Shown here piece after piece: positions 13,883 to 50,008 of a stretch of DNA of 64,000 nucleotides. The notes under the pieces were generated by a model. It made no database searches. It was not told the DNA's origin and worked only from the letters and a program-made list of their open reading frames with translations. The stretch spans positions 29,326,001-29,390,000 of the forward strand of contig OX638155.1 in the NCBI GenBank assembly GCA_951804945.1. Direction: 5' to 3'. The position numbers and the translations under genes were made by a program. Numbering within the stretch: the stretch's first letter is position 1; each line of letters begins with the position of its first letter. The DNA is from Podarcis cretensis. Its lineage: Eukaryota.

Positions 13883-14014
13883 NNNNNNNNNNNNNNNNNN
13901 NNNNNNNNNNNNNNNNNNNNNNNNNNNNNNNNNNNNNNNNNNNNNNNNNNNNNNNNNNNNNNNNNNNNNNNNNNNNNNNNNNNNNNNNNNNNNNNNNNNN
14001 NNNNNNNNNNNNNN
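13883..14014. other. N block (132 nt)
   Basis: Run of N. Confidence 0.99.
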
Positions 14015-16929: not shown

Positions 16930-18790
16930 ATACAGTCTACATTAGTTCTGTTTGAGGTCACAGGAAGAAATCCTGATTTTCCCAGCATATAGATATTTGC
17001 TTTTGCGTCTCCTTTCCAGCTGAGATTGATGCCGGCAAGTAAAGGGATTTGAATGCATATTGGCCTACTCTCTTTGCTGCTTTGATTTGCCGGTGAGCCA
17101 AGCAGAACACAATTAGTGCATATTGACACCTTTGCAGGAAGTGCTCATAAGGGAAAATAGGAAATTGAAAACGGCCTTTCAAAAGATGGGAGGAAAATCC
17201 TGCCTTGCTTAAATAAATGGAGAGAGGGAGAGAGGCAGCGAAATGCTCCGTCAGGATATTTGTATTTCTATATCATTTAGGAAAATCCTATTATAGCTTT
17301 AGCCACAGAAGCATTCCTGGTGTGCAAGATAGAGGCAGTTCATAAAAATACATAGTGTTTTGCAGCGGGAAAATAGGACAACCTATTGCTTTCTGTGGAT
17401 GGCTGCGTTACACCCCAGTTCCCATCAATAGAACATAATCTCATTGCAGCAAGCGGTGCTCAATATCAAGGAAACACGGGTACCATAAGGTACTGCAGAC
17501 TGCCAGATACCTAAAGGACACAAAGCTTTGTGTTATAACAAGGGACAATACCTCCACAACAAGGCTTTGTACCGTGGAGTGGCACTGCATAGGTGTATGT
17601 CTGCGTGTCTATGGAGTGCACATTGCTTTCTTGTCTTCCCAAACCGTATCTCTAATTCAGCTGCTGCTGCAATGTCAACCATCCAATGAATCCCTCCTCA
17701 ATTAGTGCCAAATTAGATGCCTGCTGTTAGTGGAGTCCTGCCGCACCCAGAGTCTTGGGACCACGGCTTCTGCACACGTGGCAATAATATGTAAACCGGG
17801 TCACCTCCTGATCACATCATCTTCTGAAAAAGAAAAAGAAAAAACCCTGTGCACATTGTGTGTTTCACTCTTTTTCCATCAGTGCAAAAGCACCAGAAGG
17901 AGAGTTAAGTTTGGTTGTGCAGCTATCCCAATGATTAAAATATAATAGGCTAATGAGATTACAAAAGCTGATTGTGAACAAGACCAATTGTGTTAATTGG
18001 AGCCTCCTNNNNNNNNNNNNNNNNNNNNNNNNNNNNNNNNNNNNNNNNNNNNNNNNNNNNNNNNNNNNNNNNNNNNNNNNNNNNNNNNNNNNNNNNNNNN
18101 NNNNNNNNNNNNNNNNNNNNNNNNNNNNNNNNNNNNNNNNNNNNNNNATAACTGCTGACATTAATCTTGATTACTTTAGTTAAAATAAATAGTTTTACTT
18201 GGGCGGCTTTCAGAAAATACATTAGGGGTGAATGTTATATGTTCGGGGGTGGGTGGGAGAAAATGGGAAGATCTTTATATATATATATGACTTTTTTTAA
18301 AAAAACTGTTTGCCTTTTAATATTTTGTTTGCCAAGGATCGAAAGTGAAGTGCCTGTGTCTTAGGTGAGAGGAACCTTTGTAATTGCTGCTTTGTTCCGT
18401 TCCTTTATTTCCTGCTGTTGGGAAGTATAAAAGGTGTATCTATCCCTAAACAGTTTAGCTCTCCCACCACCCCAGCCCCACTTCTTTCATGGTGAAAGAG
18501 CCTTCACTAAGCCGAACATCAATGCCATTGAACACGCAACTGGCAAGAACTCAGAAGCCAAATAATATTAGCGGAAGCATCGATAAACGGTTTGTTTATG
18601 CAAAGTTGGCACACAAGTATTCTGACTGTTTCACGCTCCAGCTGCTAGTACTAACACACCCGACTATAAAAGTGCTTTCTCATAGAAGTCATTTATTTTT
18701 TATGTGGGATTAATGTACTCAGGATGGTTCCGTAAAGCACAGAGTGACACGAAGCCACCAGCCAAAATTAATGCTGCAATATATTAGAGG
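16930..18790. promoter_or_regulatory. Cluster of putative CNEs around an N block
   Basis: TE-free and rich in TAAT/TGATT/ACAAT words. Conservation is inferred. Confidence 0.35.
18009..18147. other. N block (139 nt)
   Basis: Run of N. Confidence 0.99.
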
Positions 18791-28967: not shown

Positions 28968-30600
28968 ATGGCTTCACTTGTGCCTCTACCGCTGTTTGCG
29001 CCAGCCTCTGAATCATGGGACTCCTACCTCGCTCGGTTCGACTGCTACCTCCAAGCCAACAAGCTGACAGAAGTATCAAAGGAGCAGAAGCGGGGTCTAT
29101 TCCTCAGCCTCTGTGGGCCTGAGGTGTTTGAGACGGCCCGAGCATTGGTTGCACCTGAAGCAGTCCAGGTAACACTGTGGGACACGATCCAAGAGAAGCT
29201 CCGCAACCACTACGCACCAAAGCCGTCCAAGATTGCTGCCCGCCATGCGTTTTACCACCAGAACCAGGCAGAGGGAGAGTAAATCAACAACTACACCACC
29301 GCCCTGCGACAGGCTGCAATGCACTGCGAGTTCTGAGACTTAGACAATGCCCTGATGGATTGAATCGTCTGTGGGGTCCGGGACATCCATCTGCAATGGC
29401 GTCTCCTCGCCAAGCCAGACCTCACGCTGCAGAAAGCCATTGAGGAGGCTGTGGCCTCGGAAGGAGATCCGCAAGGCCAGCAGCTCGTGTCTTGCTAGGG
29501 AGCCAGTTCCAGTGCATCATGAAGAGGCCAGCAGTGATGAGGCATCCTCCAGTGAAGATGATGATGTGCACCAAACAAAGCGGGAGTGCAGGAAGTTCCA
29601 ACAGAAGTCCAAGGGCCAACCAGAATGCGCCGGCTGTGGAGGCAACCATTCCCGTGCCAAGTGTCGATTCAGAGACGCCATCTGTCGGATGTGTTCCAGA
29701 AGGGGCCACATCGCTAAGGTCTGCCGATCAGCTCCATCTGACACCCCCCCTTCACCGACTTGCAAGTCCAAGTCTTCACTCCAGTCTGCCAAGGAAAGCT
29801 GTTTCGCTCTCACCAACTGCCGCTGCCCGTCTGGAACCACGATTGGCCAAACCGACTCGCCTACGCGATGCAAGCTGAACGTCACGGTGCTCATTGAAGG
29901 AGCTCCATGTGACATGGAGATTGACACCGGGTCTGCCCTGTCTATCGTGTCTTGGAGCACCATCAAAAGACTGGTACCCAGAGTGTCCAAAAGGCAACTC
30001 GACTCTCACCGAGACTACCAGGGAAAAGACATTCCCATGGTAGGCGTTGGCCGGTTCTGGATTGCCTTCAAGGATTTTTCGGGCCTGCTCCGACTGGTGG
30101 TGGTTGAAGGTCAGCGGCCAAGCCTCCTAGGGCTAGACTTGTTTGATGCCCTCGGCCTGGAAGTCACCGGTATCAACTGCATCTCTAACGCAGAGACTGA
30201 GGGTCTGGTCAAAGACTTTGCCGAGGTTTTCGACGGCACTTTGGGGCAATATACAGGTACGCCCATCTCCTTTAGCCTTGATCCACAAGTCGCTCCCATC
30301 AAGCTAAAGCCACGGAGGGTTCCCTTTGCTCTCAAGGCAAAGGTGGACGAACAACTGGACAAGCTGATCGCCCAAGGAGTTTTGGAGCCGGTTGACCACG
30401 CCAAGTGGGAAACCCCCATCGTCACGGCTGTCAAGCCAGACGGGTCGGTGAGAATCTGCGCTGACTACAAGTGCACAATCAACAAGGCACTTCAGCAGCA
30501 CGCTTATCCGGTTCCTGTTGTCCAACACCTGCTGCATTCCCTGGGTGAGGGTAAGGTCTTCGCTAAGCTGGACCTTGCCCAAGCCTATCAACAACTGCCC
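28968..30600 (+). pseudogene. Gypsy gag-pro-partial RT, disrupted
   Basis: WDSYLARFDCYL gag; zinc knuckles CAGCGGNHSRAKC and CRMCSRRGHIAKVC; protease IDTGSA; RT VRICADYK...FAKLDLAQAYQQL; several stops and frameshifts. Confidence 0.9.
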
Positions 30601-31793
30601 ATTGTTCTGGAGCTCTGTATAAGCAGGCTGACTGAGCTCCTCAGCCTAGTTCTGTTCTGGCATCTGAATAAAGAAGAGCTGTTAAAAGAATCGCTGTGTC
30701 GTCTGACATGTTCACCCGCAACTTAACATCCTGCAAGTAGTTTAACATGTGGAGCAGACACTGGATTCTGTATGAAATGGAACAGTGATTTATTTACTCT
30801 TTTTAATGAACTTAAATATTAATGTGACATTTTGTAATATTTCCAATATATATTATTACAGATAGTGAACTAACAGGAAGAACCAAGAAAAAAATGCTTA
30901 GTGCAAATCTTTTACTGAAATCCTTTAAGTGCTGAAGTTCCCACTTTGTGCTTCACATCCTAAGTATATATTTCTGGGTACCTAAATGATTCTGTAGATG
31001 TATCTGATCTTTTCTGAGGAAAGCAGCAAGATGGAATTTTTAAAAATGGCACAAAACTGCTGTGGGTCAAAACTAAAGACCAAAACCCCCCCACGCAAAT
31101 CCAGTTGCTTCCATTATCGGAGTATGGATTGATTAACAATTGTCTTTCACAATAAATAAATAAATATTTTGAGGAAAGGGGAATTTGGCATGTTCATCTC
31201 AGCCCTAATAAGGACTGTCTTTTGAAATGTAACTGGCCAGATTAAGCAATTGCGTATGTACAGAAAGCAATGGTCCTTAATAGCTAGGTGGTTTTTCCTT
31301 ATGATTTCTTGGAATGTTCTCCTCATTTAGTTGAGGATGTCAAAGGAATTTATTGGCAAGGGCACTTCACCTGAGTGGTAGTGAAATGTTGGCGGCCAAT
31401 GGAGATTGGAAGCAATGTGATTTTTCTCAGTGGGTATATTCTGATTGTCGTCTCCTCTTAGAAAAGTCTCCTTCCTTTTTTCTTCAAATCTCTGATGGTC
31501 ACTAAGACTTCACTACAGTTCAGGTGAAGTAGTCTTCTGAATACATTGTTTTGACATTTTCATCTAAATTAGGTTAAATAGTGATGTTGTCCCCCAAGCA
31601 TACATTCATCTATATAATGAGGGGCAAGAGCTCCCTGCTGCTGCAATGAAATGTCACACACGCTTGGAGCATGTTGTTGGAAGCTTATCAAAAAGCAGAT
31701 GCTAAATTTAAAAGTAAATAAAACTCAACCATCACAAACAGAAAGGATTGCTTGCATTTAATCTCAGGGGGGAATTTTGCTCTGTTTCACCAA

Positions 31794-33328: not shown

Positions 33329-33686
33329 GTGGCGCTGTGGGTTAAAGCCTCAGCGCCTAGGACTTGCCGATCGAAAGGTCGGCGGTTCGAATCCCTGCGG
33401 CGGGGTGCGCTCCCACTGCTCGGTCCCAGCGCCTGCCAACCTAGCAGTTCGAAAGCACCTCCGGGTGCAAGTAGATAAATAGGGACCGCTTACCAGCGGG
33501 AAGGTAAACGGCGTTTCCGTGTGCGGCTCTGGCTCACCAGAGCAGCGATGTCACGCTGGCCACGTGACCCGGAAGTGTCTCCGGACAGCGCTGGCCCCTG
33601 GCCTCTTAAGTGAGATGGGCGCACAACCCCAGAGTCTGTCAAGACTGGCCCGTACGGGCAGGGGTACCTTTACCTTTACCTTTACC
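33329..33686 (+). mobile_element. Sauria SINE, young subfamily
   Basis: B-box GGTTCGAATCCC and (ACCTTT)n tail. Confidence 0.95.
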
Positions 33687-34863
33687 AACTAGCTTCCTGC
33701 TATATATTGGGGAATGCACTCTGCTTCTGACTCACAAGTGTGAGTTAGGAAGGATACTATTAAATCAATATATCCACTCCTAGTATCTACAACATTGCCA
33801 CAACCCAGAGCACCACATCTGCTCTGAGGGACTGGGGCTACCTCAGGATGGTTTTAGCAGATGCACAGGCGGAGGAGGGGACAGGTTCCCTTGTGCATGG
33901 ATTCTTGTGCATGGAACAAGTTACTTAGTGGTACATTGGTTACAATCCCTGATCTGTAACCCTTTGACTACTTTGTGGATTGAAACTGAGTGATACCCTG
34001 GATTTCACATTTCTCTTTATGTCATGACACCTTTCTCAAACTTATCAAGATAACACTTGATTACATTTAAAAGGTTCGATTTTACATTCACACTGTGCTT
34101 TCCTGTTGCAATAATACTCAGAGTAGCTCACAATTCAAAAATATGCTATACAAAAACAATGACCGCTCCCCACTTAAAACGGGGGGCGCCCTTTGCGGGG
34201 ACGCGTGCAGCCCTGGATCTGGAGTGGCCCCATCAGCATAGGCTTTGCCTTCCCTCAGGTGGGATACCTGGAGATCCCCGCCTACCCCAGTGAGTTGTCC
34301 AATCCCACCTGGGGGAAGCGTTGCCAGGGAAACCAGGCCAGGTAGGGGGAGGGATTACCTGCCCACACAATAGAGGGTGGATCTTAATTGTTAATCCTCA
34401 CTTGGCTCCAGAGCTTCTCCTGGAAGGACGTTGCTGTACTTCCTTGCTCCAAAAGGTAAGCCTGGGGCCTTTGGCCTCCCCCCCCCCCCCCGCGATTGGG
34501 TTCCAAAGGCTAGGGGGGGGGGGTTTAATGGATTCCAGGATCCCCTTTTAAAAAGGGGATCCTTTTCCCTAGGCGGGCCCTGATGCCCTGGGGTGCTGGG
34601 CGATGGCATGGGGGCCCCTCTGGCTGCCCCCCCATGCCTGCGGGGGCGTGTGGGCCGCGGGGGGGAGGCAACGCCACACGTGGCCCCTTCCCCTTTCCCT
34701 GCTAGGCCTGGCGCCCCTGGGGTGCGGTGGGTGGTGGCGGAGGGGGTCCCCGGCCACCCCCCAGGGCCTTTGTGGCCTCCAGGCGGCCTTTTTTAGGCCG
34801 CAGGGAGGCCTGCCGCGTTTTGGGGGCCTTACTAGGCCTCGGGGGGGCTCCGCCGGCCTAATC

Positions 34864-35765
34864 GGGCCTTGGGCGGCCCCGGAGCCTCCCCTGGGCGGCA
34901 GGGGCCTTCCTGCCGCCCCCGCGATTGCCGGGGGGGCACAGGCCGCGCCGTGTGGCCTCCCCCCGGCTCCAGAGGCCTAGCTAGGCCTCAGAGAGGCCTG
35001 GCTGGGCCTCGGGAGGCTCCGCGGCCTAAGCGGGCCTTGGGCGGCCCCGGAGCCTCCCCTGGGCGGCGGGGGCCTTTCTGCCGCCCTCGCGATTGCCGGG
35101 GGGGCACAGGCCGCGCCGTGTGGCCTCCCCCCGGCTCCAGAGGCCTAGCTAGGCCTCAGAGAGGCCTGGCTGGGCCTCGGGAGGCTCCGCGGCCTAAGCG
35201 GGCCTTGGGCGGCCCCGGAGCCTCCCCTGGGCGGCGGGGGCCTTTCTGCCACCCTCGCGATTGCCGGGGGGGCGCAGGCCGTGCCGTGTGGCCTCCCCCC
35301 GGCTCCAGAGGCCTAGCTAGGCCTCAGAGAGGCCTGGCTGGGCCTCGGGAGGCTCCGCGGCCTAAGCGGGCCTTGGGCGGCCCCGGAGCCTCCCCTGGGC
35401 GGCGGGGGCCTTTCTGCCGCCCTCGCGATTGCCGGGGGGGCGCAGGCCGCGCCGTGTGGCCTCCCCCCGGCTCCAGAGGCCTAGCTAGGCCTCAGAGAGG
35501 CCTGGCTGGGCCTCGGGAGGCTCCGCGGCCTAAGCGGGCCTTGGGCGGCCCCGGAGCCTCCCCTGGGCGGCGGGGGCCTTTCTGCCACCCTCGCGATTGC
35601 CGGGGGGGCGCAGGCCGTGCCGTGTGGCCTCCCCCCGGCTCCAGAGGCCTAGCTAGGCCTCAGAGAGGCCTGGCTGGGCCTCGGGAGGCTCCGAGGCCTA
35701 ATCTGGCCTTGGCTGGCCCCGGAGCCTCCCCTGGGTGGCGGGGGCCTTCCTGTCGCCCCCGCGAT
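34864..35765. repeat. 168-bp GC-rich tandem repeat, ~5.4 copies
   Basis: Units start at 34864, 35032, 35200, 35368, 35536 and 35704; each full unit carries the palindrome GAGGCCTAGCTAGGCCTC. Confidence 0.97.
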
Positions 35766-36484
35766 CCTGCCTCCCCCGGCTGCAGAGGCCGCTGGCAACT
35801 CTGAACCTCCCCTGGGCAGCAGGGGGGATCTCTGCAGCCGGTGGGTATACCCCCCTGAGTCGGCCCCGGGGGACAGTGTGGGCCCCTGCTTGCCCCACCC
35901 CCCCTCAAACTGTGTGGCGGGGGGGTGGAGCCACATCACGGGGCCCTGCCAACCCACTGTAGGACTGGTCTCTGTTGGGGGCGTGCAGGGCCTGCTTGGG
36001 GGTGGCCCCATGTCTGCAGCCATTTCAATGGTGACCGCATGGCGGCAGCCATTGCGCTGGTGGCCACATGGCGGCAGCCATCCTGGATCTGGCCGCATGG
36101 CAGCGGTCATGCCTCGGTGGTCCTCAGGCACACCTATAGCCTCATTAGGTACGTATTGGTTTTACATATCACCACCATGACTTGCCAGCAGGTGCAGTGG
36201 ACAGCAGGCATCGCGCTCATTATCGTCGAGGGGAGACCGCCAATGGACCTCAACTGAAATCTGTGCAGTGATTTTCTAAACTATTGCTTGTTATTTTGCA
36301 GCCTTCAGTAGCGATTCCTGCTGTGACTCAGTTCTTGCCTTATCTCCTCCCCTCCCATTATCTGTACCATTACCTTTATCACTAGTGTGTTTTTGCAAAT
36401 TGATAGCGGGCATTTCCTACCAATCATTGCCCCCCCCTTGTTTTCCGGATTCCCTAGCATACCCCACTCTATCAGCCCCACACC

Positions 36485-37740
36485 ATGCCGCCAAAGCGTC
36501 AGGCTGCTTCTCCTCCCCGCACCAGAAGGGGCACTGTAAGGGGCGCGCCCACCAAGCCTGCCCAGAGACAGGCGACTGGACAGCGGAAGGCGCGTCCAAC
36601 CAGGGAGGAGCAGGCCAAGCCCAGGAAGACCGCGCCCAAGAGGGCAGCGGCACCTAGAGGGTCTTCTGGGTCCATAAGCCCACTAGCCTTGGCAAGCCAC
36701 GCCCGTCTTGAGCGGCGGGATTCGCGCAGAGGGCGCTCTGTGTCACCTCACAGCCGCAGGCGAGGGCGCAGTAGCAGCTCCGCTGACCGCCGTGCTCAGG
36801 AAGCGGGATCACGCTCATCATCCGCATCCACCAGGCGCAGAGGTAGGTCCCCCCGTTCCAGCTCCTCTGACAGGTACAAGAGTGACAAGAGCCCTGAGTC
36901 GCGCAGATCGCGTCATCGCGGGAGGAAGCACCACAAATCCAGGAGGAGGGGCCACAAGTCCAAGAGGGACTCTCCTGGATCATCTAGTACCTCAGGTAGA
37001 TCCAGCTCCACTGATAGTGAACGGGGGGGGGGGGGAGCATCAAAGGCTATTGGGTTACAGGCCCCCACGCCCCAGGGCTGCCGCACTGGGTCTGGCGGTG
37101 CCGCACCGGAGGCACAGGCGTGAACATGGTGCTATCGCGCCATGCGGGGAGGAGGGCACTGACTCCAGAGGTAGAATTAGGAAATCCAACCACAAAAGAA
37201 CCGAGCAGCCCCCAGGCATTCGCCTGCGTGAGAAGTTGCGGGAACGCATCCTTAATGGGGAGTTCGTGGATTTGTTTGATCTGCTATCCCCTGCCGCTTC
37301 GACAGCCCTAAAATCTAAATCCGCCGAGCAGAAGGGGGGGGGGAAAGTGAGTGTTGAGCGTACCTTTCGTAATTGGCTCACTGCATATACCACTTATATG
37401 GGTATTATAGTCACTAGTTACCCTGACAGGGGTTGGCACCTGACCAACTACCTACTCATCATCCTAAAGGCTGAAGCCATGTCTGGGGGGGGAGGCGGCA
37501 CTCGCCTATGACCAGGCATTCAGGGAGCGGGCGGCAGAGGACGACACAGTTAGATGGGATATCAAAGATGATGACGTGTGGTCTGAGTTGGTTTCCCCGT
37601 TCTTCAAGAAAGGGCCCAACAATGTGAAACAGTCCAAATATCAATCCAAGGCCCCCTAGAGATCTTGCTGGGAGATCTTGCGAGCGCTGTAGTGGATCTC
37701 ACCCACCATCAAATGTATTTGGGGGAAGAAGCTTTTTCGA
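36485..37740 (+). pseudogene. DIRS/Ngaro ORF1 (gag-like), frameshifted at G-runs
   Basis: Arg/Ser-rich N-terminus, then RILNGEFVDLFDLL...FRNWLTAYTTY...ALAYDQAFRERAA...WD motifs typical of DIRS ORF1. Confidence 0.8.
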
Positions 37741-37849
37741 GGCTCCCGTGGATCAGGCACAGGCACATCTCATGACAAAAGAGAGGCCGGAGCCTCTACA
37801 GGCTCCTCTGGCGCTCAGCAAAGCAAAAACAATGCCCGCAAATAGTGTT

Positions 37850-39066
37850 CTCCTTTCCCTAGCCCCCTCACCCATATCTCTATCAGCAATGCTGCTTTTG
37901 TTACACCAGTACCCTAATAAAGAGGCAGCACATTGAGGAGGGCTTTAAGGAAGGCTTCCGCATCCCAGTGGTAGGCACCCCCTCATGCACCAATCCCCCC
38001 AACCAAAAGTCTGTCCGAGATATGCCACACATTGCCGAGAAGAAGATTACCAAAGAACGCTTGCTGGGGCGAGTGGCAGGTCCCTTCACAGAACCTCCAT
38101 TTCCAAACTTCATAGTGTCTCCACTAGGTATTGTACCTAAGAAGGCCCCAGGCGAGTTTCGATTAATACATAACCTTTCTTACCCAAGGGGTGGGTCAGT
38201 AAATGATGCCATTCCTCAAGAACAAGGCTCAGTCAAAAATGCATCTCTTGATCAGGCAATCAGGCTGGTTAGGGAGTGTGGCCCGGGCGCGCTCATGGCA
38301 AAATGTGACATCGAATCAGCCTTCCGTCTGTTACCAGTCCACCCCGGGGACTTCTGGTTGCATTTGTGGTATGGGCCATGAAACGCAGGTCAGGGTCCCA
38401 CCGCATTTCCCATTACGTCCAGCCAGCGGGCTCAGACGCGTGCGCTAGGGCGCTGGCATGCTTCATTCAGCTGGCAGCTGAATTGGGCATCCCATTGGCA
38501 GCGGACAAGACCGAAGGTCCAACCACTGTCATCTCATATCTGGGTATTGAACTGGATTCTGTGAGCCAAACCTCTCACCTGCCCCTGGCCAATCTTGCCT
38601 GCTGCCTAAGGAACAGCTACAGGTGCACTCTGACGCCTCTGGTCGCTTTGGCTTCGGCACTTACTTCAGGGGTCACTGGTGCGCGCAGCCTTGGCCGACA
38701 TCTTGGCATGAGGAGGGCATTACATGTGACTTAACTTTCCTTGAGTTTTCCCAATCCCGTGTTTGGGGGCACCTCCTCAAGGACACCAGGGTGTGCTTCT
38801 GGCCGGACAACCAGGCGGTGGTAAGAATCATTGCGAAGCAATCCGCAAAATCCAATAGGGTAATTCGCGCGCTCCGTCTCTTCGTGCTGGAATGTCTGAA
38901 AGGTAACATTTCCTTTTCTGCACGGTTCATCCCGGGCCTCAATAACGACATTGCAGATGCCCTGTCTCGCTTTCAGGTGGAGCGCTTTCGCGACCTAGCA
39001 CCCGAGGCCGATCAACTCCCAGAAGCCTTTCCGGAGGACCTCTGGGAAATTGGACGGGAGAAGTGA
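37850..39066 (+). pseudogene. DIRS-type reverse transcriptase and RNase H, with internal deletions
   Basis: SPLGIVPKKAPGEFRLIHNLSYP; MAKCDIESAFRLLPVHP; KTEGPTTVISYLGIELDS; RNase H SDASG, DNQAVV, NDIADALSR; LPxG and YxDD regions missing. Confidence 0.92.
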
Positions 39067-39971
39067 CAGCAGGAGTTCTGGGCGCCCTTGCACCATCAAC
39101 GCTGCGGTCCTACACCAGAGCATGGTCCCAATTCGAGGGGTTCAGAGATAAGTTTAGCTTACGTCGCAGGCGTACAGCTAAGGAGTCTGATGTTCTAAAA
39201 TATTTGGTTCACCTAAAGCGTAGGGGCATGGCCCTTAAAACCATCAGCCTGCACAAGGCCGCTATCTCCTACTTAAGCAACTGTTTTGGCTCCCAGACCC
39301 CTGTAACACTTTCCACGTAAGGAAGCTTATTGCAGGGTGGCGTCACTCCCACCTGCCCATTCCAGATAAGAGGAGGCCAGTAACCATAGAGATCCTCCGG
39401 CTGATCTGGGATGCGCTCCCCAGTATTTGCTGGTCCAACTATGAGGTCAGGCTCTTCAGGGCAGCCTTCTCCCTATCCTTCTTTGGTGCGCTCCGTATCG
39501 GGGAGTGCATAGGGGGCACATTGTCACCTCATCGCAGGGGCTTGTCTGTGGCTGATATCAACCTTGACAGGCGCATGATACAAGTCAAAATCCAAGCCTC
39601 CAAAAACCGATCAACTAGGTAGGGGTTCCACGCTAAGTCTAGCCTCCTCCCCACACACTGGACCATGCCCTGTCGCGGACACACGCAAATTCCTGAAGGT
39701 ACATCCTCCGGGGCCAGCCCCCCTCCTCATTCATGCATCAGGCCGCCCCATGACCCGTTGCCAATTTGTCTCAATATTGCGTAAGGCCATCCATGCTTGT
39801 GGAGGCGACCCGGCACAATTTTCCGGGCATTCCTTTCATATTGGTGCAGCAACCTCGGCAGCTGCGAGCGGCCTCCCGGCGGAACACATAAAAACAATGG
39901 GGCGGTGGCGTTCAGCTGCCTTCAAAGGCTATATTCGAAACAACCAGCAGACACTGACAGATACCATATAA
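39045..39971 (+). pseudogene. Tyrosine recombinase (phage-integrase family)
   Basis: LAPSTLRSYTRAW; FFGALRIGE (catalytic R); SK/TDQ; GHSFHIGAAT (HxxR with R>H); GRWRSAAFKGYIR (W, Y); two frameshifts. Confidence 0.92.
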
Positions 39972-40113
39972 TCCTTTCTTTCAGGCTCAACCCCCAAACA
40001 TGTGTGGATCTTTGGCCACAGCATAGTGCATTCGGTGGCCATCCATGCCACTACTGGTCCAGGCGGAGAACATCTTGGTCTGCAGCCAAAGATCTCCATT
40101 TCCTGGTTCGGCC

Positions 40114-40561
40114 AACGTGGAATGCGATGGGATGCCCTGCTCCCTTGGTTGCGTCACGAACTTGCGTTCCGCCATCCGCCAAACGCGGTTGTGCTCCACC
40201 TTGGCGAAAATGACTTGGTCGTGCAAACGTGGAATGCGATGGGATGCCCTGCTCCCTTGGTTGCGTCACGAACTTGCGTTCCGCCATCCGCCAAACGGGG
40301 TTGTGCTCCACCTTGGCGAAAATGACTTGGTCGTGCAAACGTGGAATGCGATGGGATGCCCTGCTCCCTTGGTTGCGTCACGAACTTGCGTTCCGCCATC
40401 CGCCAAACGCGGTTGTGCTCCACCTTGGCGAAAATGACGTGGTCGTGCAAACGTGGAATGCGATGGGATGCCCTGCTCCCTTGGTTGCGTCACAAACTTG
40501 CGTTCCGCCATCCGCCAAACGCGGTTGTGCTCCACCTTGGCGAAAATGACTTGGTCGCACA
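40114..40561. repeat. 112-bp tandem repeat x4
   Basis: AACGTGGAATGCG at 40114, 40226, 40338 and 40450. Confidence 0.97.
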
Positions 40562-40608
40562 AAAAAGCATAATTCTGATCAAAACAGCGATCGCGGACCT
40601 GGAAAGCG

Positions 40609-40700
40609 TACATGCCGCTCACCCCAACATCATGATTTTCTGGTCTGAAGGAGCTACATGCCGCTCACCCCAACATCATGATTTTCTGGTCTGAAGGAGC
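40609..40700. repeat. 46-bp tandem duplication
   Basis: TACATGCCGCTCACCCC...GAAGGAGC at 40609 and 40655. Confidence 0.95.
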
Positions 40701-40793
40701 TATGGTGGGCACCTATCAGACCGTGGTAACGAGCGTTGGCTGAGCGACATCAGGCATGGCCTGATTGACTGGTTGGAGGATGGCAAAGGGGAT

Positions 40794-41151
40794 TTTCAGA
40801 TGTAGGTAGTCTTGGCGGCGAGACCGCAATCTTTGCGGTATCAGGCCTTGGGCGGAATCCTTTAGTCCATCTTCCTCTTTGCGGCGGCGATACCAGGGTT
40901 CCCCGTTAAAGGGGTTTTTGAAGGGAGGCTTTGGCCGTACGCCGAAAGGTCGTCATTGCTCTCCCCTGCGGCGGCGTAACGGGGGCGGCTATCTCTGCTT
41001 GAACATATGTTCTCCAGAGCCGGCCCATCCCCCACACACACACTGGATAACCCTGATGCTCCCTAGGTCCCCGGCTGGGGACTAGGGAGGGAGAACGCCC
41101 AATGCCTGAGCCAAGGTCTACCCACATTTGAAATTTAATAAAGTTGTGGCC
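40794..41151 (+). ncRNA. Putative structured cis-RNA in the 3' region of the Ngaro element
   Basis: Nested helices 40794-40816/41110-41133, 40841-40854/41096-41109, 40894-40900/41049-41055 and 40901-40908/40977-40984, plus four hairpins, followed by AATAAA. Confidence 0.65.
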
Positions 41152-41294
41152 AATTTAATCCCATAGCACGTTGTCTAGAGTCGTTATTCCACATGACGGG
41201 GGGGACCACTCGGGATCTGGGGACTCCGCCTGTCCACGCAATATAAAATACAGAACACAATATAAAAGATGAACTACAAGATACTAAAATTATA

Positions 41295-45262: not shown

Positions 45263-47513
45263 CCCCCTTCCCCTTTGTTTATATATATATATATATACAT
45301 AGCCAAGATCTTACAATAAAGTCTATTCACAAGTAAACGACATGAAACAAAGGCCTTCCCACTGCTAATCAAAAGCTTCCTGTTTGTAGTTTAACCCATT
45401 TTGTTGCTCTTCTGGTCAGCTTGAATCACAAATTAATGCTCCTTTAAATCTTAGTCAACATGCAAAATTCAGTTGCTTTATGAGCATTCTCCAAGTCCTC
45501 TTGGGGATTATGTATATTGCCCAAGAAATGTGCACAATTCATGAAATGACTCTGTCTGCATTCTCCATGAGGCCTGATGAATGTGCACAATGGTCGGTTG
45601 TTATGAACATTAACTGCTCTACTTGCATTCCCTCTCTCTCTCACACATATATATGATGGCTATCTCAGCAACAGCATTTAATACTTTACAATATGTTGCT
45701 CATCGTTTTTATATGTAGTGTATTTTTCATCCATTATCCCTGATTAAACCAGCTTTGTTGAAAAGGCAAAACCAAACATGGCTTTGAAATTGTTCTTATT
45801 TAATTTTACTAGCCTTCATGTAACCCAGGATAACACTAATTATCTCTTTAGTGTGGCTCGTATTTCTAATGTAATTCATATGTAAATTGTAATTTAATTC
45901 ATATGGGCATGTTTGCATTCTTTGCGTATGCTCCGCTAAGAGCACAAATGCTGAATTAGAACTGTTTGGAAATCAAAACGGGATGTTGCCTTTCTTTTCT
46001 GAATTGTCTTTGATTTGTTTTGGCTTGCTGTTTGTGTAGCAACGGCATGTCTCATTCGTTCTGATTTGAAAGAAGTGACTGGCATTCCTAAGCTGTGGAA
46101 CACCTACAATGGGATTTCCTGCTGTGTGTTTTCGAAGCCCAATTCCCATTTTATATTCCACATGACAACGAGCTTGTGAAGACATGAATTAGGTGTCTTC
46201 AAGCTTGCAACTAGTTGTGGCCTTTTTTCATGGGATCCACTAGCAAACACCATAAGTCTGGGGTAGTCAAAATGGTGCCCTCCAGATTTTGTTGGACTAC
46301 AATGCCCATCATTCCTAGCCAGCATGGTCAATGGACAGGAATGATGGGAGTTGTAGTCTCATCACATCTGGAGGGCACCCCATGGGCTACTCCTGTCTTA
46401 AATGATCTTTGAGTTCTGCACCCAGTTCTAGGCCTTGTTCTGATTCATGCTCAGAGTGTTTCTAATTCACATCACCGTCATGTTGTGGATGGACCCAGCA
46501 TCTCCTCATGACCTCCAATGGTCATGCACCAGGGCAGAAGGTTCTGTCTAGATGAATCTTCACAAATGTGGGAGACAGGCCAAGGCATCTAACTAAAGGT
46601 ATCTGCAAAACTCAGTAAGACCCAGCCTGGGGGAAGATCTTCCACTGTCATTAGCCAGCCCTCTTATCTTCTATAGCATCATTTTAATTTTGGTTTGTTT
46701 CTTTAGCTTTAACTGGCATAGTGCAAAAGCCACACTACCAGATGTCCAAGTACCTAGGCATGCATCTGGAATTATTAAATGTTTCCGCAGTCATTTTCTT
46801 TATTCATATGTTCCTTTATGTTTCTAATTCCCTGCGTTAAAATATTTTTTGTGGGCAAGGACTAGGAGATCTCAATAAAATTGATATTGATGTTTGCTCT
46901 CCAGTGGCCATCTGGGCGCACATGCATGAGTTCTAATACAGTTGCCCATAACCACAGGAATCAATACACAGAAGTATATGCAACTGTCCATTAATGTTGC
47001 AGCTATGGAGAGACATATTGACCCCACTAATTCTTAAAATCTAGACATGTGGATATCAGAGATGCATACGGATTTGAATGCATTTCTCTATGAGCTCCAA
47101 CTTTAGTTTAATTAAGAAGAAGGGCTAGTGTGGTGTAATAGTTAAAACACAAAACTTGAGAGGGTGGGGTTCAAATCTCTTTGCAGCTGTAAAACTCAAT
47201 GGGTGACCTTAGGGCCATTACAAGCTTAGTTGGCAGGTCCCTTCCTGCTGACTGAATTTTAAAAAATCCTAAAGCATTTCTGAGCAGAACAATTCTGAAT
47301 GTGTTTACTCAGAAGTAATCTCCAGTGTGTTTAGGAATGTACTCAACAAAACCATTCAGAACTGAGACGTTGGCCACTTTGCCAAATCCAGCCAAACTAG
47401 ATGCAGCAAACTCCTTTTCCCTTTTGCTGTAGACATTTCTTCTGACATGATGGGGATCTATTTGTAGAATCCATGTGTTCTAATGACTCTCTTCCTATAA
47501 ATCCTCTTGAAAT

Positions 47514-47551
<38 letters not shown>

Positions 47552-47600
47552 TTGAAAGAGGAAGAGAAGGGGGAAGAAGAAGACGACCAGCCAGTTATAT

Positions 47601-47650
47601 GTTGTTGTTGTTGTTGTTTAGTTGTGTCCGACTCTTCGTGACCCCATGGA
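47601..47650 (-). mobile_element. 50-bp BovB 3' tail insertion
   Basis: Reverse complement CCATGGGGTCACGAAGAGTCGGACACAACTAAAC(AAC)n; 10-bp TSD CCAGTTATAT. Confidence 0.88.
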
Positions 47651-47743
47651 CCAGTTATATACCCCATTGGTCATACTGCATGGAGGCATTCAAATTTGGG
47701 GCTACATAGCTTGCGACTCATCAAACTGAGTGCAGATTATGTA

Positions 47744-47945
47744 CGGTGGTGTAGTGGTTAGACTGTTGGACCTGGGAACTCAGGGTTCAAATCCCTCCCC
47801 CCAGCAATGAAGCTCACTGGGTGAGCTTGAGCCAGTCACTGCCTCTCAGCCTAACCTAACTTGCAGCGTTGTTGTCAGAATTAAATGAGGAGGGAAAGAA
47901 CTTTTAGATCCTTGGAGAAAAAGGTGGAATATAAATAAATAAAAC
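47744..47945 (+). mobile_element. MIR/Squam3-like SINE (older)
   Basis: GGTGTAGTGGTTAGA A-box, GGGTTCAAATCCC B-box, CORE-like body and ATAA tail. Confidence 0.7.
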
Positions 47946-48141
47946 CAGGGACCAGTGTTTTATTATAAGATGGTAGAGAAGCCCCACTCTCCTAATTTCC
48001 TGCTACAGTCCTCTTAGCCACTGTTTGGAGAAGATGATGAGGCTGATATTGGGGTGAGTCAGAGAGTGGTGAGAGTTGTGAATTCTCCTAAGGGCACCCC
48101 TTTCCCTTCCATAAATCAAGCTCTGCAAAAAAAACATGGCA

Positions 48142-48927
48142 GTTGCGTGTGTAGGTCCCCAGGCCACCCCTCAAATAATTTCACACATAACACGTAATTT
48201 TAGTTTTGGTTTTTGGGCACTATTTTGGCCACAACTTTATTAAAATACAAAATCAGTGAGTGGTTGTTTAGACATTGGTTATGACTATCTGTCCCCCCGC
48301 CTGGGACAGAACTGACATACCGAGGTCCGATCGGAAGCCAGTAGAAGGGAAAGTCAAAATTGGAGATCATTTGAGCTAAGCGTCGGACCCACACCGCTCA
48401 CCCCAGCAGCTCCCCAAGGCTTGCCGGCCCTGGTCCCATGACAGGGATTGGACGAAATCGTGGCAAGCCCCAGGATTCCTTTAACAGAATTCCCTTTAGC
48501 GCAATAGGAGGGGCAGGCACAGCCTATCCTGACCCCTCCACCACCAGCATTTTATAACCAGTGCCTAACAGCAACCTTACAAGTTGTGACAAATTGCTAA
48601 GTAGTAGGCAAAAACCAAATGGCACAGCCAATCAGCCAAATGGCAAAATTCCTACTAGGCCCCTGCATCAAGGCAGGCGACCCCATGACAGGCAAAGCAA
48701 GGTCAACCGGAAAAGAGGGCGGGCGGGCGGATGATCCAATGCACTCTGCAAAAGAGAAAGAGAAACAGTGCCCCAATATTTAAAGACTATGGTCCCACCC
48801 ACCCAACTTGCAACATACAATTTGCCCCAGCAACCCGGTTATCCAATCAAAGTACCAGGCAACAACCATTAACCTGCCTGGCAACAATAGGGCTGGCCCG
48901 GCAGCCCACACCGCAACACACGCTCTC
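48142..48927 (-). mobile_element. Non-coding Ngaro-related element (non-autonomous copy or solo repeat)
   Basis: In reverse complement it begins AAT|GA and ends CTGGGGAC...CACGCAA like 34161-41242; it shares AATAAAGTTGTGGCCAA and CCAATGYCTRA. Confidence 0.7.
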
Positions 48928-49236
48928 ATTTAATTGGAGAATGTGCTTTATCAAGCAGGCCACAGCACAGGTGGTGTGGCGGCCCACAAGTTGCATAGGT
49001 CTGCTTTCAGTGATCATTTGAAATAATCAGAAGTATTTTAAGCTTTGGTTTTATGTGTGGCTTTCCTTGTTATATGCAGACATTAAAAGGAACTGGCAGG
49101 CTCAAGAGATGGGAGATGCATTGGCTCCTTCTGACACGTCGGGGATGAATCCAGTCGTATAAAATAATAGGCAGACCTACACACTGTCAAACACATCATG
49201 ACAACATAAGAACTGTCCAAAACTATTTTCAATAAT

Positions 49237-49384
49237 NNNNNNNNNNNNNNNNNNNNNNNNNNNNNNNNNNNNNNNNNNNNNNNNNNNNNNNNNNNNNNNN
49301 NNNNNNNNNNNNNNNNNNNNNNNNNNNNNNNNNNNNNNNNNNNNNNNNNNNNNNNNNNNNNNNNNNNNNNNNNNNNNNNNNNNN
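49237..49384. other. N block (148 nt)
   Basis: Run of N. Confidence 0.99.
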
Positions 49385-49643
49385 TTTAAGGGCAGATTGG
49401 CTACCTGAATGTCCCAGGACCTTGCAGATGAAGGAAAAGGGTAGACGTACCATAAATCTAGATTATAGGCAAAGGAGATGAGTAGAAAAGTAAATGTGTG
49501 CCAAGCTACTGCCAAACATACCATGTGAACTCAGGCATGGGGAGGGGAGGAGAGAGGGAGTGTTCTTATTTCATGAATGCTCTTGAATGGCTGAACCACT
49601 CTTGATCTGTTCTTGAATGGAGGAAGCACTCTTGTTTAATTAA

Positions 49644-50008
49644 AGGTAAAGGTAAAGGTACCCCTGCCCGTACGGGCCAGTCTTGACAGACTCTGGGGTT
49701 GTGCGCCCATCTCACTTAAGAGGCCAGGGGCCAGCGCTGTCCGGAGACACTTCCGGGTCACGTGGCCAGCGTGACATCGCTGCTCTGGCGAGCCAGAGCC
49801 GCACACGGAAACGCCGTTTACCTTCCCGCTGGTAAGCGGTCCCTATTTATCTACTTGCACCTGGAGGTGCTTTCGAACTGCTAGGTTGGCAGGCGTTGGG
49901 ACCGAGCAGCGGGAGTGCACCCCGCCGCAGGGATTCGAACCGCCGACCTTTCGATCGGCAAGTCCTAGGCGCTGAGGCTTTAACCCACAGCGCCACCTGC
50001 GTCCCGTC
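49644..50008 (-). mobile_element. Sauria SINE, young subfamily, full length
   Basis: 13-bp TSD CTTGTTTAATTAA (49631-49643, 50009-50021). Confidence 0.95.

What the first reader, a model, noticed from the sequence alone, without database searches (positions are those of the whole stretch)
48142..48927. Protein-free partner element keeps the same termini and stem architecture with different sequence
Seen (element on minus): the start AAT|GA, the end CTGGGGAC...CACGCAA and the polyA motif AATAAAGTTGTGGCCAA all match the 7-kb element. Its closing stem (TTAGGCACTGGTTAT.../...ATAACCAATGTCTAA; + coordinates 48552-48568 and 48268-48284) mirrors TCAGGCCTTGGGCG/CGCCCAATGCCTGA, with apparent compensatory change (GGCG/CGCC vs GTTAT/ATAAC). 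A small hairpin precedes the stem (48572-48586) and a GC hairpin sits just inside its 3' strand (48288-48310), as in the autonomous copy. It has further perfect inner stems: GGTCCGA/TCGGACC, GGCTTGCC/GGCAAGCC, GGAGGGG/CCCCTCC. Inference: a non-autonomous structured-RNA element mobilised by Ngaro RT/YR, defining the minimal cis-signals. Alternatively it is a solo A-B recombination product of another Ngaro family.
Basis: partly seen in the sequence, partly recalled or inferred. Interest (0 to 1): 0.85.

Follow-up and report, generated by a model that had tools for sequence, protein, structure and literature searches.

The report
ORF-less end-unit of a Ngaro-type retroelement
This 786-base stretch is one copy of a very abundant, protein-free lizard repeat that carries only the two ends and the folded 3' region of a tyrosine-recombinase (Ngaro-type) retrotransposon, a kind of remnant or parasite already known from other organisms.

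Summary
On the minus strand, window 48927 to 48142 begins AAT|GA and ends CTGGGGAC...CACGCAA. It carries AATAAAGTTGTGGCCAA about 100 nt from its end, as does the 7-kb YR retroelement at 34161-41242. Each motif occurs only in these two places, with about 0 expected by chance.

Both elements have a 14-15-bp long-range stem (0 of 2000 shuffles each). Four base pairs in it differ by compensating changes. I also found that both have imperfect terminal inverted complementarity.

Contigs from three lacertid DNA runs show a high-copy family, roughly 300 to 4700 times single-copy depth depending on the segment. Other copies begin to match exactly at 48142.

The element has no ORF over 79 aa. Neither element has split direct repeats (A1...B1A2B2) or an internal complementary region.

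My reading is that this is a single A-B end-unit of another Ngaro-type family, and that it is inert as it stands.

Both kinds are known: solo AB repeats in Cafeteria, and SIRE/VIPER in trypanosomes. Other windows of this genome carry unchecked first-stage notes of similar ORF-less units.

The parts
48142..48927 (-). The ORF-less unit itself (786 nt): GAGAGCG...CACGC-AAC. No ORF longer than 79 aa stop-to-stop.
   Evidence: High-copy depth covers this span.
48928..48930 (-). AAT trinucleotide at the 5' junction. Its counterpart at the 3' end is AAC at 48144-48142. This is the putative crossover core.
   Evidence: The big element has AAT at both junctions (34158-34160 and 41240-41242). The trinucleotide rule for DIRS-type elements is described in PMC7192593.
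48889..48917 (-). 5'-proximal arm of the terminal inverted complementarity. It starts GTTGCG, 10 nt inside the 5' end.
   Evidence: 24 of 30 positions complementary to the last 30 nt; 0 of 500 shuffles reach the score.
48142..48171 (-). 3'-terminal arm of the inverted complementarity. It includes the shared end motif CTGGGGAC...CACGCAA (48162-48143).
   Evidence: Contigs from other loci begin to match exactly at 48142 (records 4 and 13).
48524..48707 (-). Most abundant and most conserved module (about 4000-4700 times single-copy depth). It holds the 5' arm of the closing stem and a CCAAT-box-like GCTGATTGGCTG at 48636-48625. The promoter role is inferred only.
   Evidence: depth table. The CCAAT reading rests on my own knowledge of the NF-Y consensus and was not tested.
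48554..48568 (-). 5' arm of the long-range closing stem (TTAGGCACTGGTTAT).
48268..48282 (-). 3' arm of the closing stem (ATAACCAATGTCTAA). In most family copies the G-U pair at 48272 is G-C.
   Evidence: The majority variant 48272 A>G (plus strand) is seen.
48288..48310 (-). GC hairpin 6 nt before the 3' arm, homologous to 41062-41089 in the big element.
48225..48241 (-). Poly(A)-signal motif AATAAAGTTGTGGCCAA, identical in the big element.
48156..48339 (-). Second abundant module (about 3000-3900 times single-copy depth): GC hairpin, 3' arm, poly(A) motif and tail. It is the only block with detectable sequence homology to the big element (about 67% over 96 nt).
34161..41242 (+). The 7-kb YR retroelement used for comparison, from a different family. 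It has a gag-like ORF, RT/RH pieces, a YR N-terminal domain, and a faint GDSL-like region broken by a 112-bp tandem duplication. It has no split direct repeats.
40841..41241 (+). 3' domain of the big element: closing stem 40841-40854 / 41096-41109, GC hairpin, poly(A) motif 41137-41153, end motif 41217-41241.

Best explanation
Window 48927 to 48142 (minus strand) is one old, fixed copy of a high-copy, protein-free repeat of lacertid lizards. It is a single 'A-B' end-unit of a Ngaro-type tyrosine-recombinase retroelement family, and that family differs from the 7-kb element next to it. The unit carries one copy of every terminal cis-signal.

Shown:
- An AAT-type trinucleotide at each junction and no target-site duplication.
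- Imperfect inverted arms near both ends.
- A roughly 330-nt 3' domain closed by a covarying long-range stem.
- A poly(A) signal about 100 nt before the end.

Inferred mechanism:
- In the circular DNA intermediate the two ends abut (...CACGC-AAT-GA...). The inverted arms then flank the AAT crossover core used by the recombinase.
- The stem-closed 3' domain is the part of the RNA or cDNA that the element's reverse transcriptase or packaging machinery recognises.
- A single unit has no A1/A2 and B1/B2 redundancy. Its transcript would lack the promoter-upstream part and the last ~80 nt, so it could not rebuild its ends. This copy is therefore inert.
- It is a collapsed (solo) product. It arose either by recombination between the split repeats of a longer insertion at this site, or by integration of a resolved A-B circle.

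Whether that longer parent carried genes or was an ORF-less A-B-A-B element is not decided here.
For: - Motifs and spacing are shared only with the YR element, with about 0 expected by chance.
- Closing stems are significant in both elements (0 of 2000 shuffles), with four compensating pair changes. RNAalifold recovers the stem and the GC hairpin. Pair probabilities are 0.77-1.0. The family-majority variant turns the G-U pair into G-C.
- Terminal inverted complementarity is present in both elements (0 of 500 shuffles).
- AAT lies at both junctions of the big element, AAT and AAC lie at those of the small one, and neither has a target-site duplication.
- Copy number is high. Summed contig depth is 2.6e4-3.8e5 against about 80 for the single-copy flank in X1, with the same pattern in X5 and X6. 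Depth drops to single copy left of 48142, and contigs from other loci begin to match at 48142.
- There is no ORF over 79 aa and no Rfam or tRNA match.
- The big element is a YR retroelement: Phage_int_SAM_1 at E=1.9e-5; an RH piece 75% identical to a Podarcis muralis protein, with 3427 relatives; RVT_1 in relatives.
- No split direct repeats and no ICR in either element.
- Precedents exist: isolated AB repeats of Ngaro in Cafeteria (PMC8547959), and SIRE equal to A2+B2 of VIPER (PMC6681497).
Against: - No parent element carrying these A and B sequences was seen, so the 'A-B unit' label rests on analogy with the neighbour and with the literature.
- The neighbour itself lacks split direct repeats, which are the defining Ngaro feature. 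The repeat-based model may therefore not apply to this lineage.
- Depth along the unit is uneven by about tenfold. That fits a mosaic of modules shared among subfamilies better than a simple uniform solo repeat.
- One contig from another locus stays similar 26 nt beyond the proposed 5' end (record 8).
- Sequence homology to the big element is limited to about 96 nt at 67%.
Confidence: 0.55

Rival explanations
1. This is a true non-autonomous, SINE-like or SIRE-like Ngaro parasite. The ~790-bp ORF-less unit, or its A-B-A-B dimer, is transcribed, reverse-transcribed and integrated in trans by the RT and YR of autonomous Ngaro elements. The two conserved modules around the closing stem are the minimal cis-signals.
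For: - Copy number is in the hundreds to thousands, and the 3' end is sharp.
- Only two modules, 48156-48339 and 48524-48707, are kept at high copy. The 5' part and the interior of the stem domain vary between subfamilies, as expected if only the cis-signals are under selection.
- The closing stem covaries.
- SIRE/VIPER is a precedent (PMC6681497).
- First-stage notes report a 1419-nt ORF-less split-repeat element and a 794-bp sibling elsewhere in this genome. These are unchecked.
Against: - The monomer has no repeat redundancy and no ICR, so under the published model it cannot regenerate its ends.
- No evidence of independent insertion was obtainable. This copy is old and shared by at least two lineages about 0.7% apart.
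- RNA reads are few, lie on both strands and track DNA copy number.
Confidence: 0.33
2. The resemblance is incidental. The stretch is a solo LTR of an LTR retrotransposon or ERV, since it also reads TG...CA. Alternatively it is a LINE-mobilised SINE, or an unrelated repeat.
For: - If the frame is shifted by one base, both elements read TG...CA.
- CCAAT-like and TATA-like motifs followed by AATAAA resemble the U3-R-U5 order of an LTR.
Against: - There is no target-site duplication of 4-6 bp.
- Five independent motif and spacing features are shared specifically with the 3' end of a YR element, with 0 expected by chance.
- There is no tRNA, 7SL or 5S-like part, no A-tail and no 3' microsatellite.
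- The TATA-like motif is not kept in most copies. Many contigs diverge at 48556.
Confidence: 0.05

Closest known systems
Isolated (solo) AB repeats of Ngaro retrotransposons (Cafeteria burkhardae; Hackl et al. 2021, PMC8547959)
   Same: A stand-alone, ORF-less unit made of the terminal repeat parts of a YR retroelement, scattered in the genome. It is explained by recombination between 5' and 3' repeats, as for solo LTRs.
   Different: - In Cafeteria the full-length A1-[ORFs]-B1A2B2 parents with the same repeats were seen. Here no parent was seen.
- Copy number here is hundreds to thousands rather than a few.
- The host is a vertebrate.
SIRE / VIPER of Trypanosoma cruzi (Vazquez et al. 1999/2000; Ribeiro et al. 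2019, PMC6681497)
   Same: - A short, abundant, protein-free element that equals the A2+B2 end parts of a YR retroelement.
- The literature carries the same open question of whether it is mobilised in trans or is only a remnant.
   Different: - SIRE shares near-identical sequence with VIPER ends. Here the only coding element in view shares motifs, spacing and folds but little sequence (about 67% over 96 nt).
- The clade of YR elements is different.
Ngaro-like retrotransposons of vertebrates (Goodwin & Poulter 2004; Xenopus DIRS-53_XT, PMC9210276)
   Same: - Gene order gag, RT/RH, YR, then a hydrolase-like region in the 7-kb neighbour.
- No target-site duplication.
- Non-coding end regions of a few hundred bases.
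   Different: The defining split direct repeats (A1...B1A2B2; 236 and 152 bp in DIRS-53_XT) are absent from both elements in this window. Both instead have short, imperfect inverted complementarity between the ends.
DIRS1-like elements (inverted terminal repeats plus internal complementary region; PMC7192593)
   Same: - Inverted relation between the two ends.
- A species-specific trinucleotide at the circle junction that ends up on both sides of the insertion.
   Different: - No internal complementary region was found.
- The inverted arms are only 30-40 nt and about 75-80% matched.
- No methyltransferase domain was seen.
SINE/LINE pairs that share a 3' tail recognised by the LINE reverse transcriptase (for example eel UnaSINE1/UnaL2; own knowledge)
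   Same: A conserved, folded 3' module shared between a coding retroelement and a short non-coding one. This is a works-like analogy for the stem-closed 3' domain.
   Different: - The insertion chemistry is different: recombinase and circle versus target-primed reverse transcription.
- There is no pol III promoter, no A-tail or microsatellite, and no target-site duplication.

Membership tests
Ngaro-like YR retrotransposon (the 7-kb neighbour, and by extension the small unit's lineage) | Encodes a tyrosine recombinase | tested here: met
   Big element: Phage_int_SAM_1 at E=1.9e-5, above the curated cut-off. The catalytic half is broken by frameshifts. The small unit has no ORF.
Ngaro-like YR retrotransposon (the 7-kb neighbour, and by extension the small unit's lineage) | Encodes RT/RNase H placed before the recombinase | tested here: met
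   The RH-region piece at 38623-39063 finds 3427 relatives. The best is 75% identical (Podarcis muralis XP_028594215). Relatives carry RVT_1. The order is RT/RH, then YR.
Ngaro-like YR retrotransposon (the 7-kb neighbour, and by extension the small unit's lineage) | Split direct repeats A1-[internal]-B1-A2-B2 | tested here: not met
   A sensitive comparison of ends against interior finds no direct repeat in either the big or the small element. This could reflect secondary loss by B1/B2 or A1/A2 recombination, which is inferred only.
Ngaro-like YR retrotransposon (the 7-kb neighbour, and by extension the small unit's lineage) | Hydrolase (SGNH/GDSL) ORF after YR, as in vertebrate Ngaro, and no methyltransferase | tested here: inconclusive
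   Lipase_GDSL_2 scores only E=0.11 on 40341-40694. The region is disrupted by a 112-bp tandem duplication.
Ngaro-like YR retrotransposon (the 7-kb neighbour, and by extension the small unit's lineage) | Insertion without target-site duplication | tested here: met
   The flanks of both elements share only the AAT/AAC trinucleotide.
Solo AB repeat of a Ngaro element | Its two halves match the A and B repeats of a full-length coding family in the same genome | not testable with these tools
The metagenome, genome and viral scans gave nothing relevant.
Solo AB repeat of a Ngaro element | ORF-less unit bounded by the element's own termini | tested here: met
   The 3' boundary is confirmed by other copies. 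The 5' boundary is only approximately confirmed.
Non-autonomous YR retroelement (SIRE-like) | Multi-copy family with defined ends | tested here: met
   Depth is about 300-4700 times single copy in three DNA runs, with a sharp edge at 48142. The tool warns that summed depth is not an exact copy number.
Non-autonomous YR retroelement (SIRE-like) | Both ends shared with an autonomous partner | tested here: inconclusive
   With the only coding element in view, the small unit shares motifs, spacing and folds but not sequence. There is one 96-nt block at 67%, and the 5' ends are not alignable.
Non-autonomous YR retroelement (SIRE-like) | Evidence of independent transposition (empty sites, insertion polymorphism, replication-competent repeat structure) | tested here: not met
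   The monomer has no repeat redundancy. This copy is present at the orthologous site in runs X1 and X6. Empty sites could not be searched.
DIRS1-like element | Inverted terminal repeats plus an internal complementary region | tested here: not met
   Short inverted complementarity between the ends is present, but no ICR rises above the shuffled background.

The most novel reading that the evidence does not exclude
Lacertid lizards may carry a SINE-like, protein-free parasite of Ngaro retroelements with thousands of copies. Only two modules stay conserved across its subfamilies: the two arms of a covarying long-range stem with their neighbouring sequence, and the poly(A) signal with the tail. 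Those modules would then mark the minimal RNA/DNA signals that a eukaryotic YR retroelement's reverse transcriptase and recombinase recognise, something not yet defined for any Ngaro element.
Probability: 0.3. Interest if true: 0.6.

Novelty: new member of a known kind. Interest (0 to 1): 0.35.

Why it matters
YR retroelements (DIRS, PAT, Ngaro, VIPER) are the least understood retrotransposons. For Ngaro, no cis-acting signal has been defined experimentally. A short, abundant, ORF-less unit keeps the same termini, spacing and a covarying long-range stem as a distantly related coding element. That comparison points to the parts of the ends that are under constraint: the AAT junction, the inverted arms, the stem-closed 3' domain and the poly(A) motif. 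It therefore gives a compact substrate for retrotransposition or recombinase assays. The kind of object itself, a solo AB or SIRE-like unit, is already described, so the value is incremental: a vertebrate example and a candidate conserved structure.

Tried and rejected
Attempts to get other copies or a parent:
- The search for homologous proteins with the longest open frame of the 3' block (48203-48397, minus) found no candidate.
- The shared 20-mer in metagenome contigs gave two hits, both bacterial coding sequence matched by chance.
- A family-majority 24-mer found nothing in genome contigs or viral contigs.
- The search of earlier findings returned titles only, with no sequences.

Structures and families looked for and not found:
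- Split direct repeats and an ICR-like internal copy of the termini, in both elements. Nothing rose above shuffles.
- Known RNA families and tRNA-like parts.

Alignment and expression:
- A plain MAFFT alignment of the 3' domains mis-registers the 5' arms. An alignment cut at the stems works.
- The 5' ends of the two elements are not alignable.
- RNA-seq reads (X23) are few, lie on both strands and track DNA copy number, so they say nothing about the element's own transcript.

Readings considered and rejected:
- Solo LTR: no target-site duplication, and the shared features are specific to the 3' end of a YR element.
- LINE-dependent SINE: no tail and no pol III part.

Step deliberately left out:
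- I did not build a family consensus from the read variants. I only described single variants against the fold.

Full report
**What is there**

Read on the minus strand, window 48927 to 48142 (786 nt) is preceded by AAT (48930-48928). It starts GAGAGCG and ends CTGGGGACCTACACACGCAA followed by C. It has no coding capacity. The longest stop-free frame in either strand is 79 aa, and the longest on the element's own strand is 65 aa. A protein search with one of these frames found nothing. Rfam and ARAGORN find no known RNA.

**The comparison element**

Window 34161-41242 (plus strand) is a degraded 7-kb retroelement.
- It has a gag-like ORF and RT/RNase H pieces. The RNase H piece is 75% identical to a Podarcis muralis protein and has 3427 relatives in the library. 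Relatives carry RVT_1.
- It has a tyrosine-recombinase N-terminal domain, Phage_int_SAM_1 at E=1.9e-5.
- After the recombinase there is a faint GDSL-like region, E=0.11. A 112-bp tandem duplication breaks it.
- AAT lies at both junctions and there is no target-site duplication.
- The genome is evidently that of a lacertid lizard.

**Check of the observation**

Each shared feature was tested against the whole 64-kb window.

| Feature | Small element | Big element | Chance |
|---|---|---|---|
| AATAAAGTTGTGGCCAA | 48241-48225 | 41137-41153 | no other match with up to 3 mismatches |
| CTGGGGAC-N(4-20)-CACGCAA | 48162-48143 | 41217-41241 | 0 expected |
| CCAATGYCTRA-N(15-45)-AATAAA | present | present | 0 expected |
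| 3' arm to the end | 140 nt | about 145 nt | |
| Poly(A) motif to the end | 99 nt | 105 nt | |

The long-range stem is real in both elements.
- In the small one, 48568-48554 pairs with 48282-48268 in 14 of 15 positions (one G-U, one C-A mismatch). Pair probabilities are 0.77-1.0.
- In the big one, 40841-40854 pairs with 41096-41109 in 13 of 14 positions.
- None of 2000 shuffles of the upstream sequence reaches either value.
- The arms are homologous in sequence (TYAGGC..TGG and CCAATG.CT.A). Four pairs differ on both sides while staying paired.
- RNAalifold on an alignment cut at the stems recovers the closing stem and the GC hairpin, which sits 6 nt before the 3' arm in both elements.
- Whole-domain folds are only moderately better than shuffles, with z of -2.6 for each.
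- The interiors of the two domains cannot be aligned with confidence.
- The 'small hairpin' before the stem is a 4-bp feature of no weight.

**A further shared feature**

In both elements the last 30-40 nt are the imperfect reverse complement of a 5'-proximal segment that starts TTGCG. This segment lies at positions 11-40 in the small element and 34-73 in the big one. No shuffle out of 500 reaches either score. If the ends were joined in a circle, these arms would flank the AAT junction.

**Copy number and boundaries**

I laid Logan contigs of three DNA runs from different organisms on 46500-49230.
- Flank differences to the window are 0%, about 0.7% and about 1.5% for the three runs.
- The unique flank has word depth of about 80, 82 and 16.
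- Inside the element, summed depth is 2.6e4-3.8e5 in X1, which is roughly 300 to 4700 times single copy. The other two runs show the same profile.
- The tool warns that summed depth is not a copy number, so I use it only as an order of magnitude.
- Depth falls to single copy immediately left of 48142. Contigs from other loci begin to match exactly at 48142 (records 4 and 13).
- On the 5' side most matching contigs stop at 48926-48933. One stays similar to 48953, so that boundary is less firm.
- Beyond 48984 all DNA runs show zero depth. The tool says this cannot be interpreted.
- A contig bridging the 3' junction at single-copy depth is present in X1 and X6, so this insertion is old and shared.
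- Most matching contigs are 85-95% similar to this copy.
- Depth is uneven along the unit. The blocks 48156-48339 and 48524-48707 are about ten times more abundant than 48708-48891, and three to eight times more abundant than 48340-48523. Many contigs diverge at 48556, just inside the 5' arm.
- The family is therefore a set of subfamilies. They share two modules around the closing-stem arms and differ in the 5' part and in the interior of the stem domain.
- Of nine listed majority variants in the domain, six fall in unpaired positions of the MFE fold. Two turn G-U into G-C, one of them in the closing stem. One breaks an interior pair.

**What it is**

The unit has the termini, junction trinucleotide, 3' architecture and lack of target-site duplication of the YR retroelement beside it. 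It shares almost no sequence with that element: one 96-nt block at about 67%. So it belongs to another family of the same lineage.

Neither element has the split direct repeats (A1...B1A2B2) that define Ngaro, nor a DIRS-type internal complementary region. The published model for split-repeat elements needs that redundancy to rebuild the ends from a shortened transcript (PMC6681497). A lone A-B unit, with its poly(A) signal about 100 nt before its end, cannot do so.

The simplest account is that both elements in this window are collapsed forms.
- A-internal-B (the 7-kb element) would arise after loss of A2-B.
- A-B (the 786-nt unit) would arise after loss of the internal part.
- The route could be recombination between repeats, or integration of a resolved circle.

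This step is inferred, not shown.

**What remains open**

I could not decide whether the parent of this unit was a coding element (solo AB) or an ORF-less A-B-A-B element (a real non-autonomous family).
- That needs other copies in their context. No tool gave them.
- First-stage notes from other windows of the same genome mention a 794-bp sibling, a 1419-nt ORF-less split-repeat element and a GCAATGA core at three junctions of one Ngaro element. These are unchecked titles, and I used them only as leads.
- The AAT/GA junctions seen here are compatible with that GCAATGA core.

**Comparison with what is known**

- Isolated AB repeats of Ngaro elements are described in Cafeteria and likened to solo LTRs (PMC8547959).
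- SIRE of T. cruzi equals A2+B2 of VIPER, and the literature leaves open the same remnant-or-parasite question (PMC6681497).
- A trinucleotide at the circle junction that ends up on both sides of the insertion is described for DIRS-type elements (PMC7192593).
- The object is therefore a new member of a known kind.
- The part that seems not to be described is the conserved, covarying long-range stem that closes the 3' untranslated domain just before the poly(A) signal, together with the short inverted arms at the ends.

**Verdict**

Interest is moderate to low (0.35).

Noticed in passing
window 47604-47971: A separate, extremely abundant repeat lies just downstream of the unit. Summed depth is up to about 4e5, or thousands of times single copy. 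Loose-end consensus reads GGAGACCAGGGTTCAAATCCCCACT, which looks like a tRNA-derived SINE. It also attracts most of the RNA-seq reads. A single-copy stretch (47972-48063) separates it from the unit.
   Followed up: partly
window 33329-33684 and 49641-49996: Two 356-nt SINE-like copies, 99% complementary and in inverted orientation, lie 16 kb apart and bracket the region that holds both YR elements. Other copies of the same family in the window are only 80-92% alike.
   Followed up: no
window 34686-35825, 40104-40663, 40609-40700: The 7-kb element carries internal tandem arrays: six 168-bp units in its long 5' untranslated region, four 112-bp units inside the hydrolase-like region, and a perfect 46-bp duplication.
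   Followed up: no
window 40823-40839: A perfect 7-bp hairpin (ACCGCAA-TCT-TTGCGGT) sits directly before the closing stem of the big element. It repeats the CGCAA and TTGCG words of the element's own 3' end and 5' inverted arm. Whether this is a miniature junction-like sequence is unexplained.
   Followed up: partly
window 29371-30726: A 451-aa ORF with a faint aspartyl-protease match (E=0.008, below the cut-off). It is probably a remnant of an LTR-type retroelement.
   Followed up: no
window 48984-49230: All three DNA runs show zero contig depth here, next to the N run at 49237-49384. The reads tool states that such holes prove nothing. I left the N runs (13883-14014, 18009-18147, 49237-49384) untouched.
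   Followed up: no
window 48625-48636 and 48550-48556 (minus strand): A CCAAT-box-like GCTGATTGGCTG lies in the most conserved module. A TATAAAA lies about 80 nt downstream, within the inner end of the 5' stem arm. The TATA-like motif is not kept in most family copies, since contigs diverge at 48556.
   Followed up: partly
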